A stretch of 64,000 nucleotides of DNA. It comes from Parasitella parasitica NRRL 2501. Taxonomy: Eukaryota; Fungi; Mucoromycota. Positions 53,780 through 62,402 of the stretch are shown here, in pieces. Made by a program: the position numbers and the translations under genes. The stretch spans positions 64,451-128,450 of the forward strand of contig MU619291.1 of the NCBI GenBank assembly GCA_025201805.1, written 5' to 3'. The first letter of the stretch is position 1; every line of letters starts with the position of its first letter. The notes beneath the pieces are model-generated. The model was given only the letters and a program-made list of their open reading frames with translations, did not search any database and was not told the DNA's origin.

Positions 53780-55550
53780 TCAAGCCTGAAAGCCTGACGC
53801 TGGCAGATGATTTTTATTACTAAATACCAAGCAATGTACCAAAATCATTGCCAAAAGACAGTCTGGGTCCTGTAATGCCAAAGCTCCATTCGCAGGGCCA
53901 TTGCTATTATTACCACAGCTGTTCCTATCGGTGTCTACTACCTCCGTTACATTTACATTACTTGACAATTGTGGCAATGGAGGTGGTGAAAGGGAGGCCA
54001 CGCTGGCTTTTCTAACCATGTAATCTTCCTCATCGCTACCATGTGCATACACCTTTGTCAAACGCCTATTTGCTTTCGCTGCAGCTGTGTTGGCTGGGAT
54101 TGGCGGTAATTGAGCATTTGCATATCTGTTGTGAGTCGGTGGAGGCGGATAGTCAAAGCTATTTAGGCTGCTGCCATAAACACTGCTGTACATCAAGTAC
54201 TGCACTTCAGGATCTATATTAGAGCATCTCCTTCTCCTACTGTTCGAGGACACCATGGGCTGGCCCAATCGAAAAGAGTCGTTTGTCAATGATGGAATTG
54301 AAGATAGTGTAATCTGTCTTTGAGGAGCATTCGTTGTGCGAGGAGAGTGCAATCCAGAAGAGGCTATTGTGTCCATAGCAGGAGACATGGTGGTGTTTCG
54401 TGGAAACAGCTCTTCTACGGCTTAGACGTCTTAAGCATATGGTCTTAGTGCAATGGTGGCAGGCAAACCAGGAGCTGGGCTAGAAGCAGGAGATGGCGGC
54501 CTTGAATGAAGCGTCGTTGGTTGGCTTTTGTTTGCCGAAAGGGTAGCAGAGGAACTAAGACTAGGCGCATTATGACTACTGCGTATGGATATCTCTGAAA
54601 AAATTGATCGCTGGTCGTCAATGCTGACATTATCCACAGGCCCAGCGGTAGCTGTGTCTTTAAATGGCCGACCTTGCCTTGTAGCATTTCTTGATTGCTG
54701 ATAGTCTAGATTGGAAAGCACATCTGCATTGGCTGCTTGTAGTGTTGAAGGTAGCGGTAATGTAGTAGTCTGTGGCGGTGGCGGTGATTGTCGCAAAGAA
54801 GGCTTTGCTTTGAATTGATTTACTTTTTCCCGTTTGCTAGATCGACATCAATGGGCTGCAATTGTTTTCTTTGCACGTGCGATCTCTTTATTGTGGGTAT
54901 TGCCGTTCGCGAGCGCTCTCCAAGCTGTCTTTGATTGTCCAAATGCAATGATTCTTTAGATGTAATGCCTAGATCAAATGCAGACGCAAATTTCTTTATT
55001 TGTCTTTGATTGCTGCTTTGGAGATGTGTTGCAGTCGATGGGAGTGTAGGTGTCAACGCCCTCCGGTCGAAAAAATTACAAGAGTTTACCATGTAAGCAG
55101 TACTTGCGAGCGGCAGTGATGGACTTCCACCAGGAAACATCAACGCAGCGGCTCTTATATCTGTTTGGTGATCTCTTTCTTCGGCATTGTCGTCGCCTAC
55201 AATTGGATGTGTATCCCGGCAAATGCTAACGTTGCCGCCATTGTGCGTGCTACAGTCATCATCGTCGTTGGCATGGTTACTATATTCCGGCTTACAAGGC
55301 AAGATTCGTGATCCGGCTGTTTCTTCAAGCGCATATTTCGTCATCAAGTTCTGTTCTGGCTGCTTTTCATGCGGTACGGATGCAATAATGATGGGCACCT
55401 TGGTCTTGATTTCCTCATGTTTCATCCCAAATTGGAAGGTAATCTCAAGCTGGTGGTAGACGGAGAAAAGAGGAGAGTCCAATGTGTAGCTGAGACGAGG
55501 GTGCAGCTCATGTCGTATCCAACAAGGTTTTTTCCAAGTCGAACAAGATA
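53780..55550 (-). pseudogene. Arrestin-like gene, 3' half (pseudogenised)
   Basis: TWKKPCWIRHELHPRLSYTLDSPLFSVYHQLEITFQFG..KVPIII; one-base frameshift in an A-run at ~54825; two in-frame TAA at 54431-33 and 54422-24. Confidence 0.8.
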
Positions 55551-55554
55551 TACA

Positions 55555-56045
55555 CTACTGATCGTTTTTAAACCATCGCTGCGCTGTGCGTGGGTTGATT
55601 TGAAGTTTTAGTGCTGCAGCTCTGGCACTCATACCCCTTTCATAAATCAAGGCAAACAACTGCTCCTTTTCTGAATTTTTGTGATGTTTGCGAATGTCGC
55701 GAGCTCTTGTATCTTCCTCCAGCTTGACATCTCTGTCGGCTGATTGTCGTTTGAGGTCAAGATACATACAGAAATTCGTCGCCATCTCAATGGGGTACAT
55801 CTCCTCATCTACCTCCATTTCCACTACTGTAACTGCCATGCCTTCGTCGTTATAAAAATTTTCTTGGCTGTCATCATGCACAAAATTATTCATTTTTGAA
55901 GAGAAATTTGTAAATGTAGCGGTCTGTGTGGTTAGTGTGGTTTGTGTGGTGTGAGTGCCACACTGCATTTTCACGTTTGAGGCGCCGAAACCATTACTTG
56001 AATGTCACCAAACAAAAAATGCAGTGTGGTTTTGACGCTCGCCTA
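55555..56045 (-). mobile_element. Tc1/IS630-like transposase 5' fragment with upstream repeats
   Basis: MNNFVHDDSQENFYNDEG..LFALIYERGMSARAAALKLQINPRTAQRW (HTH), truncated at the arrestin junction. Confidence 0.7.
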
Positions 56046-56371
56046 GTGTTCCCCAAAGTTAAAAATCGCTTTTCAAACAAAAAAAAAAGAGCTCTCTTTA
56101 TCTTAAAAATAACGACAATGACGAGAGATAAATTTAGTACCTATTTAAACTCTACTTCGTACATATACACTCAAACAGTAGCTTTGAATATGCATTTTAT
56201 GTCCGTAACTTTTGTAAAGGAATGACGCGTGATCAAGCCCGAGTTTGAAAGGATCCCCTTATTTTCTGTCGTCGGATAAATGTTTAAAGAGAGTGTGGCT
56301 TCGAGTGGTTTTCAAGTGTCATTCACACTCAAAGATTTTTTATTGAATAATGTAAGATAATAACTCTAATC

Positions 56372-57955
56372 ATGTCTGAAACTCCACCTATCGTATATAG
56401 TATAGCTAATATCAAAAATGCGTTGAGCATAATGGCATCGAATCAATCAAGGAAACTAACATTGGATCTAGTAATTTATGTTAAGGCCTCAGTATGGGAA
56501 GCATGTCTATTAAAGATAAACGAATACTGCGGTACCAAATGGACAAAACTAAGAAAATGGAAGAGTAGTGACAAAGTCGTATTCGGAGAAACAATACAAT
56601 ACCATAGAAGTGGAGCATACGAATCCAAGCGATCTGCACATATCGGTCAAAAGGATAGTAAGCGCTGTAGGTGTGCAGCGCTATTGAGTATTGCTAGCTA
56701 TCATGCAAATGTGCCAAGTCATTTAGGATCAGATGTTGTAGAGTTCAAACTTTTGAAAATCACACAAATCACACTCCTGGTGATTTAAATGAACTGGGCA
56801 CGTTGCCAATTAACAGCACGGCTTTTGACACTATCAAGTACCCTTTGGCTTTAGGAAACAAATGCAGAAGTATAAGAATTGCAACCCTAAAAACTTTGGG
56901 TACATTGAAAGAAGAAAACAAAGGATCTCGACGTCCTAGTTATGATGATGTTTACAATTTAATGAAGAAGGTATTGATATACAATTCGTGCTATCGAACA
57001 ATAATGAAAAAATCAAACTTTATAATTAAATGAAATATTACTTGTACAGATATCGAGAGAATGATATTAAATCGTTTTTATTTTGGTTGAATGATAAATT
57101 AGCTTCTCAGGGATATAAAAGTTTTGCTGGCAACCCACAATTGTCTTCACAAGACACAAGCTTGTTTGCTTATGGTTTTCAATCTCAAATTCAATCAAGA
57201 AAAATGGAACAGCATCAATCATTTTGTATAGACGCTACCCATGGCATTTCTTCTAGAAGCATGGAGGTTTTATATACCCTTCTAGTTAAATATTTATTGA
57301 CTGGAAAGGGCTATCCTTTTGCATATATGGTCACTAATGATCAAAGTGTAGGTCCTATAAATCAATGGCTTGTTTATCTGCGAGATAATTGTAATTTAGC
57401 ACCTACAGCAATTACGATTGACTGTAGCTTAGCTGAATTCAATGCCATTAAAGCAGCTTTTAGAAATCAAGTTGTTATCCATTATTGTGCCTTCTATATC
57501 TGGCGATCATGAAAAGATAACTTGGGTGCAAAACTGTCTTTACCTACGAGCATGTCAAACACTGAAGCAACAGAGTACAAACCGGATCTTTTGAACGACT
57601 CGCACTTAATTCTTGCTGAAACGAGGAAAAATTCATTATTTAGAAGAATAGAAAGATTCAAGCTAAAGATCGAAGAACATACTGAAGTCTTAGATTATTT
57701 TACTCGATACTGATTTAACAATGAAGAAGTAGTCAAGAGATGGTCGTCAAAGAAATCCACAAGTCATTTGTAACCAACAACTACATCGAAAGTTGGCATA
57801 ATCAACTAAAAGTCGTTTACTTTGAGGGACTAAGAATTAACAGATTGGACAGATTGGTCTTTGTCCTAACAAACGATGTTGAATATTACTTCACAGAAGA
57901 GTCTAATAGAATACTAGCAAATATTGGACGCATGGGCCCATTACAACTTTTTTAG
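56372..57955 (+). mobile_element. Mutator-like (MULE) transposase pseudogene
   Basis: FCIDATHG, GKGYPFAYM, ITIDCSLAE, HYCAFY (decayed CxFH), TNNYIESWHNQLK (DDE triad); several stops and frameshifts. Confidence 0.9.
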
Positions 57956-57979
57956 AATGTAGTCGAAGGAGACAGCTTG

Positions 57980-59330
57980 ATCTTTTTCGATGGCAGATCG
58001 ATTGCTTCTATATTAAAATCACATGGAAAAAACTGCTCGTTGATTATCAAAATTTACCTGATGAAGAGAAAGCCCTTTGTGGTTTTTGCCTTAACGGTAT
58101 TCTTGACCTCAGCAACAACAACGAATCTGGACAGAAACAATTATTTACCAATGATCAGTGGAAGTATTTGAACAAACACCTTAGGTCAAAAGTGGCAAAA
58201 AGAACACCTAAACTAAGCGATACTACCAAGGAAAGACTTGAAGAAATAATTGGAAAAATCAAAGATGAAGATGAAGAAGAATCATATTACATGGCTTTAG
58301 AAAGTACTAGAGATGCTCACCCGAACGATAAGTGGATGTTCAAAGTCGTTTCTCATGTGTAAGCATTGCATATTTTAGACTTTCAATTAGAGATGGTAAA
58401 TCCTCTATACAGTGTATTAATGTATAATTTTAGAATCAATTCATACAGGGAGCGCTCATATATATTCAATAACTCAACATCTGATGTGAGTGAACTAGAT
58501 TTATGATTAAATTATGGGGTGAGGTCCTGGAGCTCTTGATTGGTGATGACAAGAACCTTTTTATGAAATGGGGAGAGACCTCCACTGACACCACCACAGC
58601 AGTTCGACGCAGCAACAACAACAACTGACCCCACACAATTGGATGCAAGGTCGATGGGAGGATTGTCTGTCAAGTCTCAAAAAACATTGATACATATCAC
58701 ATTGAATCGGCTAGAGCATCAGCTAGCTATAGAAAAGTTATTGATGACAAATTCAAACTTGCTGCTGAGGCAAAATGCACGGTTGATGATATTGTGATCT
58801 CTGGAAATCTCTTCAAAGAACCTTCCGTCTGTTTACAAAGTTTACAAATCTTTGGTTTGCAAGCCAACGTATGTACCTTACACCTTCTCGATCGCGGATT
58901 CTACGTGAATTGCGTTGATCATGACATTTCACTTCATAACAGTCTTAAACGTTTCTCTGACGATTTTATCACTTGGATACGTCACCTAGCTTCATTAAAA
59001 AAAATTGTAAAAGTATTGCCTCATTGTCAAGCCAAGCTTATCATAACCAGCCAGCCACGCTTCCAGAGATGTTTAATTTACAAGATTTTGATGAAAGCCT
59101 TGATAAGTACTGCAACAAAGATTGGGTGACAGGCTCCTTTCTACCACCAACCAGCACAGGGATCTTTTCCCCCCAAACAGTTTCTTACCGTTACATCAAC
59201 AGTAAACAGATCATATAAGAAAGATTATCCAAAAAGTTATCTTGATGATGGAACTGAAGTTGTTTCAATATATAACAAAATGTCTCAAAAGAAATAAAAG
59301 CACCCATCTGCCTCATCTGCCTCCTCATCC
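57980..59330 (+). pseudogene. Broken PD-(D/E)xK-like nuclease-fold gene
   Basis: WGET..IGCKVDGRIV..IESAR..KVIDDKFKLAAEAKCTVDDI..LQIFGLQA..LHLLDRGFYV; frameshifts. Confidence 0.55.
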
Positions 59331-59544
59331 TATAAAAAGATACACAAGAACTAATAAATATGAGTATCTGTAGCATTGAACAAAAACTACAAATAAAAAA
59401 AGCTTTTGATGTATGGCCACGATTCTTCTCTTGTCTTATATCTTAATTGATTTTATTATTATTCCTTTCTTTTCTCCTTGGATTATTCATATAAAAAAGT
59501 AAGATCGTGCTATAGATGTTCTATTAAGTATGTGTTGCTTATCG

Positions 59545-59887
59545 TATATAACATCCAAGCGCTGACCATCACCTCATCAATAACGGTTATCCGGTTTCTC
59601 TATTTGAAAAGCTTTGCGAGAGCAGATTGTCTGTTCACACCGTTCTTTCGTGCTTGTCTTGAGCCTTCGTCTCTCAACCTCTACAACCAAGATGATATTC
59701 CTCAAATACAAGCCATGTTGAGTTTTGCTTCTTTCCGCAAACATCTCGCCATCCAACCGCATGATGTTAATTTTGCTTACAATCACGGACGAACTCGAAA
59801 CTTCCGCAAAATGGTCATTGAAGCGACAACTCGTCGTCTACCTACTACTCCGGTTACATCATGTATCTTCTGGAAACAGTTTTGGGT
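59545..59887 (+). mobile_element. Probable L1-like LINE ORF2 fragment (region just upstream of zf-RVT)
   Basis: LFTPFFRAC..RTRNFRKM..P..FWKQFW, the pattern preceding the C-terminal zinc finger of fungal L1-like ORF2; cut at the arrestin junction. Confidence 0.5.
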
Positions 59888-60365
59888 ATAACGTGGTTTC
59901 AACCAACGGAGACAACTCCTTGCAAGGCAGTAAGTGTCTTTTTAGAATGATGAGGTATTCAGCTGTCATTGTTCTTGTAATGCCAGTAGTGATGGTGACA
60001 ACGACTATGTAGTTGATAGTAGCTCGCTTATTTGAAAAGCTTCTGGGGTAAATATTTGGTACATCCAGCTCCCAAGGGATAATATGGTCTCCCGCTGGTA
60101 GATTTGTTTTACCAAGCAATGGCACTTTTAATTTGGGCAGTAATGAGCATACTGTTTCCACGTTGTATGGCGACTTTAATCTGATACCAATAAAGCCTTT
60201 AAATTTGATGGATATTTGTCTGATTTTTGTAGGTCTGATCAATGTAAATCCAACATGTCCTTGTAATGCTCTGGATTCCTCTGCGGATTGAAGTTTTGCT
60301 GGGCCAATGACTTCAATATAATTTTGTTTTGGGTTAATCTCTATCGACCTGAAATCATCCTTCAT
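59870..60365 (-). pseudogene. Arrestin-like gene, 5' half (arrestin-N fold)
   Basis: LQGHVGFTLIRPTKIRQISIKFKG..LPAGDHIIPWELDVPNIYPRSF..ATINYIVVVTI..IILKRHLLP; ORF ends at foreign sequence. Confidence 0.8.
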
Positions 60366-60566
60366 GATGTTATTTTGCTATTTCAGCAGGCGCAAAGTAG
60401 TAAGGGAAAGCAAGAAAGAAAAGGATTTGGAACTAACGAAGAAAATGCTTGTTTTTCAGGTTAAATACAGCAGTGTTACTCAAAAAGTGGAGTATTAATG
60501 GTTGCACTCTACTTGTAAAACATTATTAATTCTTTTTTTTTTTTTCTTTTATACACAAAAAGTATA

Positions 60567-62402
60567 ATGAAGCTTGCGCTAGGGTGCTTATTTGCACTGA
60601 TGGTCGCAGAAGCTTATTTCGCTCCGTTTACAAAGGTCGAAGAGAGCTTCAATCTACAAGCAACGCACGATATCATACACCAAGCAGATCAGTTTGACCA
60701 TGTACTATTCCCTGGCGTTGTGCCGCGTACTTTTGTAGGTGCATCCTTATTAAGCTTATTCGCATGGCCGTTGATTAAATTCGCTCAATTATCCTCGATC
60801 AACCAACAAGTCTTGGTCCGTGTTATTCTGTCTGCCTTTGTTGTCCTCTCCCTGGGGAGATTCGCTTCTGGTGTCAAATCTCTGCTGGGCCCAACAGCTG
60901 CAAATGTAACTATTATGCTCATCATTTGTCAATTCCACTTCGTGTTTTGGTCTTCTCGCACGTTGCCAAATACATTGGCGTTGCCATGGGTTCAGCAGGG
61001 TCTATCTCATTGGCTGTACAGCCTATCACAATCCAGTGGTCGTACACAACATTTGAACTGGATGATTCGGCTCCTAACATTTGCTGGTGTTGTGTTTCGG
61101 TTTGAAGTAGGCATCTTGCTAGTTGTCTTGCTGATAAGCGAATACATGCATGGGACAATCACAGTATTAAATACTCTAAAGCAAATGTCTGTTACTTTTG
61201 TTGTTAGTTTGCTGATTACGGTACCTCTAGATTCGTATCTTTGGAACGCATGGCTCTGGCCAGAAGGCATGGTCTTTCATTTCAATGCAGTTCTCAATAA
61301 GAGCTCTGAATGGGGAACTCTGCCTTTTTATGCGTATTTCGCCCTATTTCTGCCTCGCTTACTCCTCATTTCATACCCATTGGCATGCTTTTCTTTTGCA
61401 ACAAATGGGCGAGTTCGTCGCATGTTGACACCCATGATTGTTTATATCGCACTATTCTCCTTCTTGCCACACAAAGAATGGAGGTTTATTATCTACGCAA
61501 TCCCTGTATTCACTGCTGCTGCTTCTGCTAGTATTGCAAAGTCTATTCATGCCGCATCTCGTTCCTGGTTACATCGCATTTCACTTTTCGTTATGTTGGC
61601 GGGTGCTGCTGCGTCATTTGCAATTGCCACCACCATGTTTCAAGCATCTCGATTTAACTACCCTGGAGGAGAAGCTTTGCTCGCTTTGCATCAGATTGAA
61701 AAGAATAAGCCCTACGTGCATGTTCATATGGACGCTGAAACTGCCATGACAGGGGCATCTCTCTTCGGTCAATCTAACCCCAACTGGTCTTACTCCAAGA
61801 ACGAAGCACACACGTCTCAAGACGACTTTTTGGACGCCCATTATACACACGTTATCACAGCTCGTCCTGAAATGTTTGACATGACATTGTTCGAAATCAT
61901 TGACAAGACGTATGGATTGGATAAAGTGCAGCTGAAAACATTACATGAATACAAGAAATCTATTCAGAAGCACAACATCTCACCTATTGAATTCATAATG
62001 TCTCCTAAATTATATACACTTCGGTTGATCAACCCTCAAAAGGTTTGGATTCAAATCATGTTGCGCAAATTCCCAGTTGTACTCTACAGCAAAAGCTATT
62101 GGTAAAGTTCATTTTATGTGTATTGTAACGGTAACACAAAGTTCTGATTTCTGCCTTGTTGTTCATATTGCAGTCCATATTGTATGGCGGCCAAGCAGCT
62201 CATCTCGAAATACTGTAAGCATATAGAAGTCATTGAAGTGGATCGTCAAAGAGATGGAAACGAAATACAGGATGCTTTGATTGAATTGACTGGTCAACGT
62301 ACATTTCCAAATCTATTCAAAAGTGGTAAGAGCTTAGGTGGGTATGACCGGCTATCAGCGCTAGACAGAGAAGGAAAATTAGCTGGACTTTGTGATTCCT
62401 AA
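60567..62402 (+). CDS. ALG12: ALG12 alpha-1,6-mannosyltransferase fused to a C-terminal glutaredoxin (intron 62102-62173)
   Basis: PFTKVEESFNLQATHD, FPGVVPRTFVG, SRTLPN, LPHKEWRFI, NYPGGEAL, AMTGASLF, YSKNE; then PVVLYSKSYC/PYC, TGQRTFPNLF, LGGYD. Confidence 0.92.

What the first reader, a model, noticed from the sequence alone, without database searches (positions are those of the whole stretch)
60567..62402. ALG12-glutaredoxin fusion whose CPYC active site is assembled by splicing
Seen: the ALG12 ORF runs without a stop into a glutaredoxin N-terminus (IMLRKFPVVLYSKSY). A GT-AG intron (62102-62173) splits TG|T so that splicing yields CPYC followed by IQDALIELTGQRTFPNLF and GGYD; intron retention gives W-stop and a Grx-less ALG12. 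Established: ALG12 acts in the ER lumen and yeast/human enzymes have no Grx domain; CPYC is the classic dithiol Grx motif. Inference: a probably luminal redox domain coupled to lipid-linked glycan assembly, possibly switchable by intron retention. I do not know of a description of this fusion.
Basis: partly seen in the sequence, partly recalled or inferred. Interest (0 to 1): 0.8.

Follow-up and report, generated by a model that had tools for sequence, protein, structure and literature searches.

The report
ALG12 mannosyltransferase fused to luminal glutaredoxin
In pin moulds (Mucorales) the enzyme that adds the eighth mannose to the N-glycan precursor carries a glutathione-dependent redox domain at its end, apparently inside the ER, and the clubroot protist shows the same pairing, probably acquired separately; I found no paper describing it, and it hints at a link between redox and glycan assembly.

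Summary
The fusion is real, spliced and conserved. A 2,007-nt RNA-type contig covers the gene and skips exactly 62102-62173, creating CPYC. This is the only ALG12 of the genome (Parasitella parasitica) and keeps all eight published catalytic or substrate-binding residues checked. The architecture occurs in 30 genera of Mucorales and Umbelopsis and in none of the other fungi, animals or plants sampled. A relative's model matches chicken ALG12 and has no membrane helix before the glutaredoxin, so the domain should be luminal. New here: Plasmodiophora brassicae and two unnamed sequences have the same ALG12-CPYC fusion. Their ALG12 half does not group with the fungal one (AU p=0.015), so whole-gene transfer is unlikely; convergence is likelier than ancient origin but not proven. 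The intron-retention switch is not supported. No retained form was seen (contigs only). The stop comes from the GTAA donor and is not conserved. Three free glutaredoxin genes here also have introns inside the motif, and Plasmodiophora has none. The domain was lost or decayed in four lineages, so it is accessory. Best reading: a constitutive, ALG12-anchored ER class I glutaredoxin.

The parts
60567..62101 (+). Exon 1 (coding): complete ALG12 (membrane part to about residue 362, luminal alpha/beta domain about 366-487), then glutaredoxin helix 1 and strand 1, ending in the first two bases of the Cys512 codon
   Evidence: domain borders from the model of the Mucor lusitanicus orthologue
60639..60641 (+). 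Glu25, catalytic base (chicken ALG12 E35); also kept: R54, H124, R178, W249, R264, R306, N364
   Evidence: alignment to 9s6t, PMC13503287
61656..62030 (+). C-terminal luminal domain of ALG12, from NYPGG to the last strand
62034..62101 (+). N-terminal part of the glutaredoxin domain, including the conserved Lys509 three residues before Cys512
62102..62173 (+). 72-nt GT-AG intron, phase 2 in the Cys512 codon; same position in Umbelopsis and across Mucorales
62174..62402 (+). Exon 2 (coding): PYC completing CPYC (Cys515 at 62181), QR-TFP cis-Pro motif (62301), GGYD (62337), extra Cys526 (62214) and Cys585 (62391), stop codon
62403..62612 (+). 3' untranslated region, as far as the RNA-type contig reaches
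59862..60365 (-). Divergent neighbour: first part of an arrestin-domain gene, about 200 bp upstream; same arrangement from Umbelopsis to Rhizopus (context, not part of the fusion)

Best explanation
The gene makes one constitutively spliced 587-aa ER membrane protein: a normal ALG12 (Dol-P-Man:Man7GlcNAc2-PP-Dol alpha-1,6-mannosyltransferase) whose luminal domain continues into a complete class I dithiol glutaredoxin. Shown: the splice, the single ORF, both domain identities, conserved catalytic residues, the distribution and the losses. Inferred with high confidence (about 0.9): the glutaredoxin lies in the ER lumen. Inferred with moderate confidence (about 0.75): it is an active glutathione-dependent thiol-disulfide oxidoreductase, stabilised in fungi by a structural Cys526-Cys585 disulfide. 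Proposed mechanism: ALG12 serves as membrane anchor and address, in place of the type II anchor of Grx6/7-like or GRXC3/C4-like enzymes. Cys512 exchanges glutathione with luminal protein thiols (deglutathionylation or glutathione-driven oxidation) in the part of the ER where the lipid-linked glycan is finished. The domain is accessory, backed up by a free secretory glutaredoxin and an OST3/6 subunit, and mannosyl transfer does not depend on it. The fungal fusion arose once, in the ancestor of Mucorales and Umbelopsis; a similar fusion probably arose separately in the Plasmodiophora lineage.
For: Splice. Sole ALG12 in the genome. Catalytic residues. Topology: PMC13503287 gives 7+4 membrane helices and a luminal C-terminal domain; the relative's model has pLDDT 92 and no membrane helix after residue 362 and matches 9s6t at TM 0.93 by target, rmsd 2.0. 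Class I features: Lys with a short loop, CPYC, no WP, TFP and GGxD conserved across the clade (criteria from PMC7138851). Extra Cys pair in 31 of 33 fused domains, lost together in two Rhizopus rows, and both together in none of 46 free glutaredoxins, which fits a disulfide in an oxidising compartment. Many of the best free single-domain matches are membrane-anchored CPYS/TFP proteins. Losses. Backup enzymes: L008 and OST3/6 with CVPC. Second lineage.
Against: No activity, localisation or substrate data exist. Topology is taken from a chicken structure and a relative's predicted model. The glutaredoxin tree (99 columns) is weak: the grouping with secretory types has support 82, a better tree holds both fused sets together (p-AU 0.62), and exon-wise scores in this genome tie a secretory and a non-anchored paralogue. 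Recurrence with the same partner in two lineages could point to tighter coupling than an anchor role.
Confidence: 0.58

Rival explanations
1. Direct coupling: the glutaredoxin controls ALG12 itself or a neighbouring enzyme of lipid-linked glycan assembly or transfer through reversible glutathionylation or a disulfide, tying C-branch mannosylation to the ER glutathione state. A candidate target is Cys121, three residues before the pyrophosphate-binding His124.
For: The same partner is fused in two distant eukaryote lineages. The active site has been kept in 30 genera. Cys121 is present in 18 of 20 fused versus 16 of 52 unfused sequences. Precedent for redox-assisted glycosylation: MagT1/OST3/6 (PMC4137057). 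In Plasmodiophora the gene is the divergent neighbour of dolichol kinase.
Against: Cys121 is absent in Umbelopsis, is kept in all four lineages that lost the domain, lies in a membrane helix, and the counts are confounded by kinship. The ALG12 luminal domain of this protein has no cysteine. The four lineages without an intact domain keep a full ALG12. Yeast, plant and animal ALG12 work without it.
Confidence: 0.22
2. Tolerated passenger or structural cap: the domain was captured by a chance read-through fusion and now mainly stabilises the luminal domain or retains the protein in the ER, with little redox role.
For: Repeated loss and decay. Cunninghamella keeps the fold but not the motifs. Double mutants of plant luminal glutaredoxins have no obvious phenotype (bioRxiv 10.1101/2023.09.01.555924).
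Against: Lys, Cys1, the cis-Pro, GG and Asp are invariant across 28 sequences of about 54% mean identity, which is selection on catalysis rather than on fold alone.
Confidence: 0.12
3. One reading: regulated intron retention toggles between ALG12 with and without an active glutaredoxin.
For: Intron position is conserved across the clade. Retention would leave a complete ALG12, and natural truncations at this border exist. It is the last intron, so a retained transcript might escape decay (own knowledge).
Against: Only the spliced contig was seen, at depth 190. The stop follows from the consensus donor and is not conserved. Free glutaredoxin genes have introns 2-3 nt from the same spot. There is no intron in the Plasmodiophora motif.
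Confidence: 0.05
4. Annotation artefact: two separate genes, or an unexpressed remnant.
For: Some database models stop at YW (for example P0006), and exon 2 has its own Met.
Against: One continuous spliced contig; intronless fused ORFs in other samples; a protein starting in exon 2 would lack CPYC.
Confidence: 0.01

Closest known systems
ALG12 (GT22, GT-CA fold; chicken structure 9s6t, PMC13503287)
   Same: Catalytic Glu and seven substrate-binding residues, membrane fold and luminal C-terminal domain; single orthologue in the genome.
   Different: About 98 extra residues forming a glutaredoxin after the luminal domain; absent from the animal, plant, chytrid, Mortierella and Glomeromycota proteins sampled.
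Yeast Grx6/Grx7 and the fungal membrane-anchored CPYS/TFP glutaredoxins (PMC4279222)
   Same: Class I fold, secretory-lumen location (inferred here); TFP motif shared with the early-diverging fungal members.
   Different: Those are monothiol and have their own N-terminal anchor; this domain is dithiol (CPYS in only two genera) and hangs on an 11-helix glycosyltransferase.
Arabidopsis GRXC3/GRXC4 (bioRxiv 10.1101/2023.09.01.555924)
   Same: Class I glutaredoxins working on the luminal side of the early secretory pathway.
   Different: Type II single-pass proteins, with no enzyme partner in the same chain.
OST3/OST6/MagT1 thioredoxin-fold subunits of oligosaccharyltransferase (PMC4137057)
   Same: A CxxC oxidoreductase physically attached to N-glycosylation machinery in the ER lumen; the closest functional analogy.
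   Different: Different family, separate polypeptide, acts at glycan transfer to protein; this genome has its own OST3/6 with CVPC.
Known glutaredoxin fusions (PMC2679010)
   Same: Glutaredoxin as a mobile module in multidomain proteins.
   Different: The partners named there are redox or Fe-S proteins; that survey never mentions glycosyl- or mannosyltransferases.

Membership tests
ALG12 | PF03901 above cut-off and closest solved relative is ALG12, not ALG9 | tested here: met
   138 bits vs cut-off 23.8; only PDB sequence hit 9s6t, E 3.9e-79; relative's model E 8.6e-32 to ALG12 vs 1.6e-12 to ALG9
ALG12 | Catalytic base E35 and substrate ligands R67, H140, R185, W256, R271, R312, N370 | tested here: met
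   E25, R54, H124, R178, W249, R264, R306, N364
ALG12 | Membrane module followed by a luminal C-terminal domain | tested here: met
   model of the M. lusitanicus orthologue, TM 0.93 by target to 9s6t; a prediction, on a relative
ALG12 | Alpha-1,6-mannosyl transfer to Man7GlcNAc2-PP-Dol | not testable with these tools
   needs an assay or alg12 complementation
Class I dithiol glutaredoxin | CxxC motif of CPYC type, conserved Lys with short loop, no WP motif, cis-Pro and GGxD | tested here: met
   K509-x-x-C512PYC515, QR-TFP, GGYD; criteria from PMC7138851 and own knowledge
Class I dithiol glutaredoxin | Glutathione-dependent oxidoreductase activity | not testable with these tools
   HED, GSSCys or roGFP2 assay needed
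Grx6/Grx7-type secretory glutaredoxin | Own N-terminal type II membrane anchor | tested here: not met
   anchored by ALG12 instead; the genome's separate gene L008 has such an anchor
Grx6/Grx7-type secretory glutaredoxin | Monothiol CPYS/CSYS site | tested here: not met
   CPYC here; CPYS only in Cokeromyces and Benjaminiella
Grx6/Grx7-type secretory glutaredoxin | Descent from that subfamily | tested here: inconclusive
   shared TFP and many top hits, but tree support 82 and an alternative tree scores higher; exon-wise scores tie
Regulated intron-retention switch | Detectable retained isoform | tested here: inconclusive
   none in the contigs of one run; raw reads not available
Regulated intron-retention switch | Conserved outcome of retention, or features beyond an ordinary intron | tested here: not met
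   stop not conserved; similar introns in free glutaredoxin genes; no intron in Plasmodiophora
OST3/OST6/MagT1 | PF04756 match | tested here: not met
   neither exon hits it; the true member lies on contig C97

The most novel reading that the evidence does not exclude
Two eukaryote supergroups independently fused a dithiol glutaredoxin to ALG12 because C-branch mannosylation of the lipid-linked N-glycan precursor, or a partner step, is under glutathione-dependent redox control in the ER lumen. Other eukaryotes would exert this control in trans through free secretory glutaredoxins, whose substrates are largely unknown.
Probability: 0.2. Interest if true: 0.85.

Novelty: new variant of a known kind. 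Interest (0 to 1): 0.62.

Why it matters
Luminal glutaredoxins (yeast Grx6/7, plant GRXC3/C4) have few known substrates, and one review notes that redox-dependent changes have not been detected in the ER steps of N-glycan synthesis (PMC8113034). A fusion that appears in two distant lineages on the same ALG enzyme is a gene-fusion pointer that makes this testable in one gene, in a tractable fungus (Mucor lusitanicus) or by yeast complementation. It also corrects annotations: several database models stop at the intron or lack the N-terminal third. The architecture is already present in automated annotations, but I found no paper that describes it.

Tried and rejected
Literature: five searches aimed at the fusion found no description, and a survey of glutaredoxin fusions does not mention glycosyltransferases; subscription journals are not covered. 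The ESM Atlas showed no cluster with both families, but it covers only clusters of 50 or more. Two word searches with the glutaredoxin part were underpowered (69 and 13 candidates). A metagenome scan with the Plasmodiophora exon found no further fusion. The idea that the domain replaces a missing OST3/6 was rejected, because OST3/6 with CVPC is present. An obvious luminal cysteine target in ALG12 was not found. Whole-gene horizontal transfer between fungi and Plasmodiophora was rejected for the ALG12 half (p-AU 0.015, quick tree); the glutaredoxin half decides nothing (p-AU 0.62). The careful tree searches did not finish, so quick trees were used; the test on the three non-fungal domains alone did not finish either. 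Operator notes: the spliced model was searched exon by exon by reference and the joined step was left out. The database's own joined record (P0001) came up as a hit but was never used as a query; folding and profiles used relatives' proteins. Locus L076 (labelled human oral metagenome) was not examined and was left out of the script. The costly search was used once, because the distribution claim rested on absence.

Full report
Observation. The ORF at 60567-62102 encodes 512 residues and ends in the first helix and strand of a glutaredoxin. A 72-nt GT-AG intron at 62102-62173 splits the Cys codon TG|T. Splicing gives CPYC and a 587-residue product; retention gives W-stop. No other acceptor in reach opens more than 28 codons. 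Exon 1 is PF03901 and exon 2 is PF00462, both above cut-off. Run X1 (RNA by guess) has one 2,007-nt contig over 60563-62612 that skips exactly these 72 letters, with zero depth on the flanks. Short contigs from other samples encode the fused protein without an intron. The best protein hit is a 587-aa Parasitella parasitica record at 100% identity. The spliced model was searched exon by exon; the joined step was left out.

ALG12 half. This is the only ALG12 in the genome; three other GT22 genes exist. The only solved relative by sequence is chicken ALG12, 9s6t. The catalytic base and seven substrate ligands named in PMC13503287 are all kept: E25, R54, H124, R178, W249, R264, R306, N364. That paper describes eleven membrane helices and a C-terminal domain in the ER lumen. 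An AlphaFold model of the Mucor lusitanicus orthologue (pLDDT 92) ends its membrane helices near residue 362, then forms the luminal domain (366-487) and the glutaredoxin (490-577) with no further membrane helix. It matches 9s6t at TM 0.93 by target, and yeast, wheat and human glutaredoxins at rmsd about 1.5. A luminal location is therefore inferred, not shown.

Glutaredoxin half. It has the class I features: Lys509 with a short loop to Cys512, CPYC, no WP motif, TFP and GGYD (criteria from PMC7138851). These positions are invariant or nearly so across 28 fused sequences; variants are CPFC, CSYC and, in two genera, CPYS. Two further cysteines (526 and 585) occur in 31 of 33 fused domains; two rows flagged negative by the script do show the second Cys in the alignment. 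Both are missing together in two Rhizopus rows. None of 46 free glutaredoxins has both. I read this as a structural disulfide, which suits an oxidising compartment, but it rests on one loss event and I could not measure the distance. Many of the closest free single-domain proteins are membrane-anchored CPYS/TFP types from Sporodiniella, Umbelopsis, Coemansia and Plicaturopsis. The tree is too weak to name the donor.

Distribution in fungi. The fusion is found in 30 genera of Mucorales and Umbelopsis. It is absent from the Jimgerdemannia, Glomeromycota, Mortierellaceae, chytrid, animal and plant proteins among the best 120 hits, and no glutaredoxin lies within 5 kb downstream in Jimgerdemannia. 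The intron sits at the same place in Umbelopsis, and unspliced gene calls from many samples end in SK[ST]YW. The domain has been lost repeatedly. Rhizopus microsporus has no trace of it on the four loci examined, of 24 contigs carrying the same protein. Mucor mucedo has a frameshift and Sporodiniella a stop at the domain border; each keeps a remnant of strand 1 and no exon 2 (one genome each). Cunninghamella keeps a decayed domain without the motifs. ALG12 stays intact in all four, so the domain is accessory.

Second lineage. A search of 1.84 billion representatives with a profile of the C-terminal half found three non-fungal-type proteins with both parts. P0185 lies between the dolichol kinase (PBRA_003168) and histone deacetylase (PBRA_003170) genes of Plasmodiophora brassicae. 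Upstream exons complete its ALG12, and one exon holds the luminal domain and the entire CPYC glutaredoxin. P0204 (631 aa, no organism given) has PF03901 plus PF00462 and is 48% identical to P0185. P0207 is an unnamed third case whose ALG12 pieces lean towards these two. In the ALG12 tree P0204 and P0185 fall outside fungi, and a clade with Mucorales is rejected (p-AU 0.015; quick tree, few protists sampled). Their glutaredoxins have TVP and lack the extra cysteines, but monophyly of all fused glutaredoxins is not rejected (p-AU 0.62). Whole-gene transfer is thus unlikely. Convergence is more parsimonious than an ancient fusion lost in most eukaryotes (my estimate about 0.75), but it is not proven, and losses are clearly frequent. 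Only the best 150 hits were visible, many of them multi-glutaredoxin proteins, so further fusions may have been missed.

The switch idea. No retained isoform was seen, though contigs drop rare forms. The W-stop is what TG plus a GTAA donor spells. Among unspliced records, 21 stop at once and 5 run on; in Syncephalastrum the frame crosses the intron. Three of the four free class I glutaredoxin genes of this genome also have an intron inside the active-site motif, 2 or 3 nt from the same spot. The Plasmodiophora fusion has none. Splicing of CPYC is therefore an ordinary feature of these genes, not a special design.

Mechanism. The best-supported reading (0.58) is a constitutive ER protein in which ALG12 anchors and places an active class I glutaredoxin in the lumen, doing the kind of work ascribed to yeast Grx6 (PMC4279222) and plant GRXC3/C4, near the glycan assembly line. 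A free anchored CPYS glutaredoxin and an OST3/6 with CVPC could provide backup, which fits the losses. Direct control of ALG12 or a partner (0.22) is favoured by the recurrence with the same partner and by the MagT1 precedent (PMC4137057). It is weakened by the lack of a luminal cysteine in ALG12 and by the poor fit of Cys121. A passenger or structural role (0.12) conflicts with invariant catalytic residues. The retention switch (0.05) and an artefact (0.01) are unlikely.

Novelty. Both domains are members of known families; the combination is a new variant. It exists in automated annotations, but five literature searches and a survey of glutaredoxin fusions do not describe it. Earlier notes of this scan held nothing on it. 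Interest 0.62: solid, conserved, recurring in a second supergroup and directly testable, but function is unproven, the domain is dispensable, and the splicing switch does not hold up.

Noticed in passing
window 55549-59870: The divergent arrestin-domain gene is split: homology to relatives stops at about 59871 and resumes at about 55548, across roughly 4.3 kb that holds a decayed RNase H-like, probably Mutator-type transposase ORF (57030-57512, weak PF21056 hit). Its transcript contig has depth 5.8 against 190 for ALG12.
   Followed up: partly
P0001 vs P0002: Two records both named Parasitella parasitica differ by 16% in ALG12 although this genome has one copy; the two assemblies may be different species or one is misnamed.
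   Followed up: no
L033:621-10810: In Plasmodiophora brassicae the ALG12-glutaredoxin gene is the divergent neighbour of dolichol kinase, with an alpha-1,4-glycosyltransferase and a chitin synthase within 10 kb.
   Followed up: partly
L008, L009, L010: Free glutaredoxin genes of this genome carry introns at near-identical but offset positions in the active-site motif (after TG in the fusion, after TGT-C or TGT-G, after TGT-CC): possible intron sliding or repeated gain. L010 appears to encode an unusual CEFC site; L008 is an anchored CPYS secretory type.
   Followed up: partly
L025-L032, window 60365-60567: The head-to-head arrestin/ALG12 pair with a 200-400 bp spacer is kept from Umbelopsis to Rhizopus, suggesting a shared bidirectional promoter; one spliced contig (L002) covers both genes.
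   Followed up: no
P0029, P0043, P0047, P0051-P0055 and similar: Many Mucorales database models are about 420 aa and cover only 68% of ALG12, lacking the N-terminal part with the catalytic Glu; others stop at the intron. Probably gene-model errors.
   Followed up: no
P0132, P0133, P0138, P0141, P0142, P0145: Membrane-anchored proteins with two to four tandem glutaredoxin domains of CPYS/TFP type; P0141 is from Coemansia, the others were not identified.
   Followed up: no
P0018 (L001): The C-terminus IGRAHV looks like translated sequencing adapter (own knowledge), so this record is truncated.
   Followed up: no
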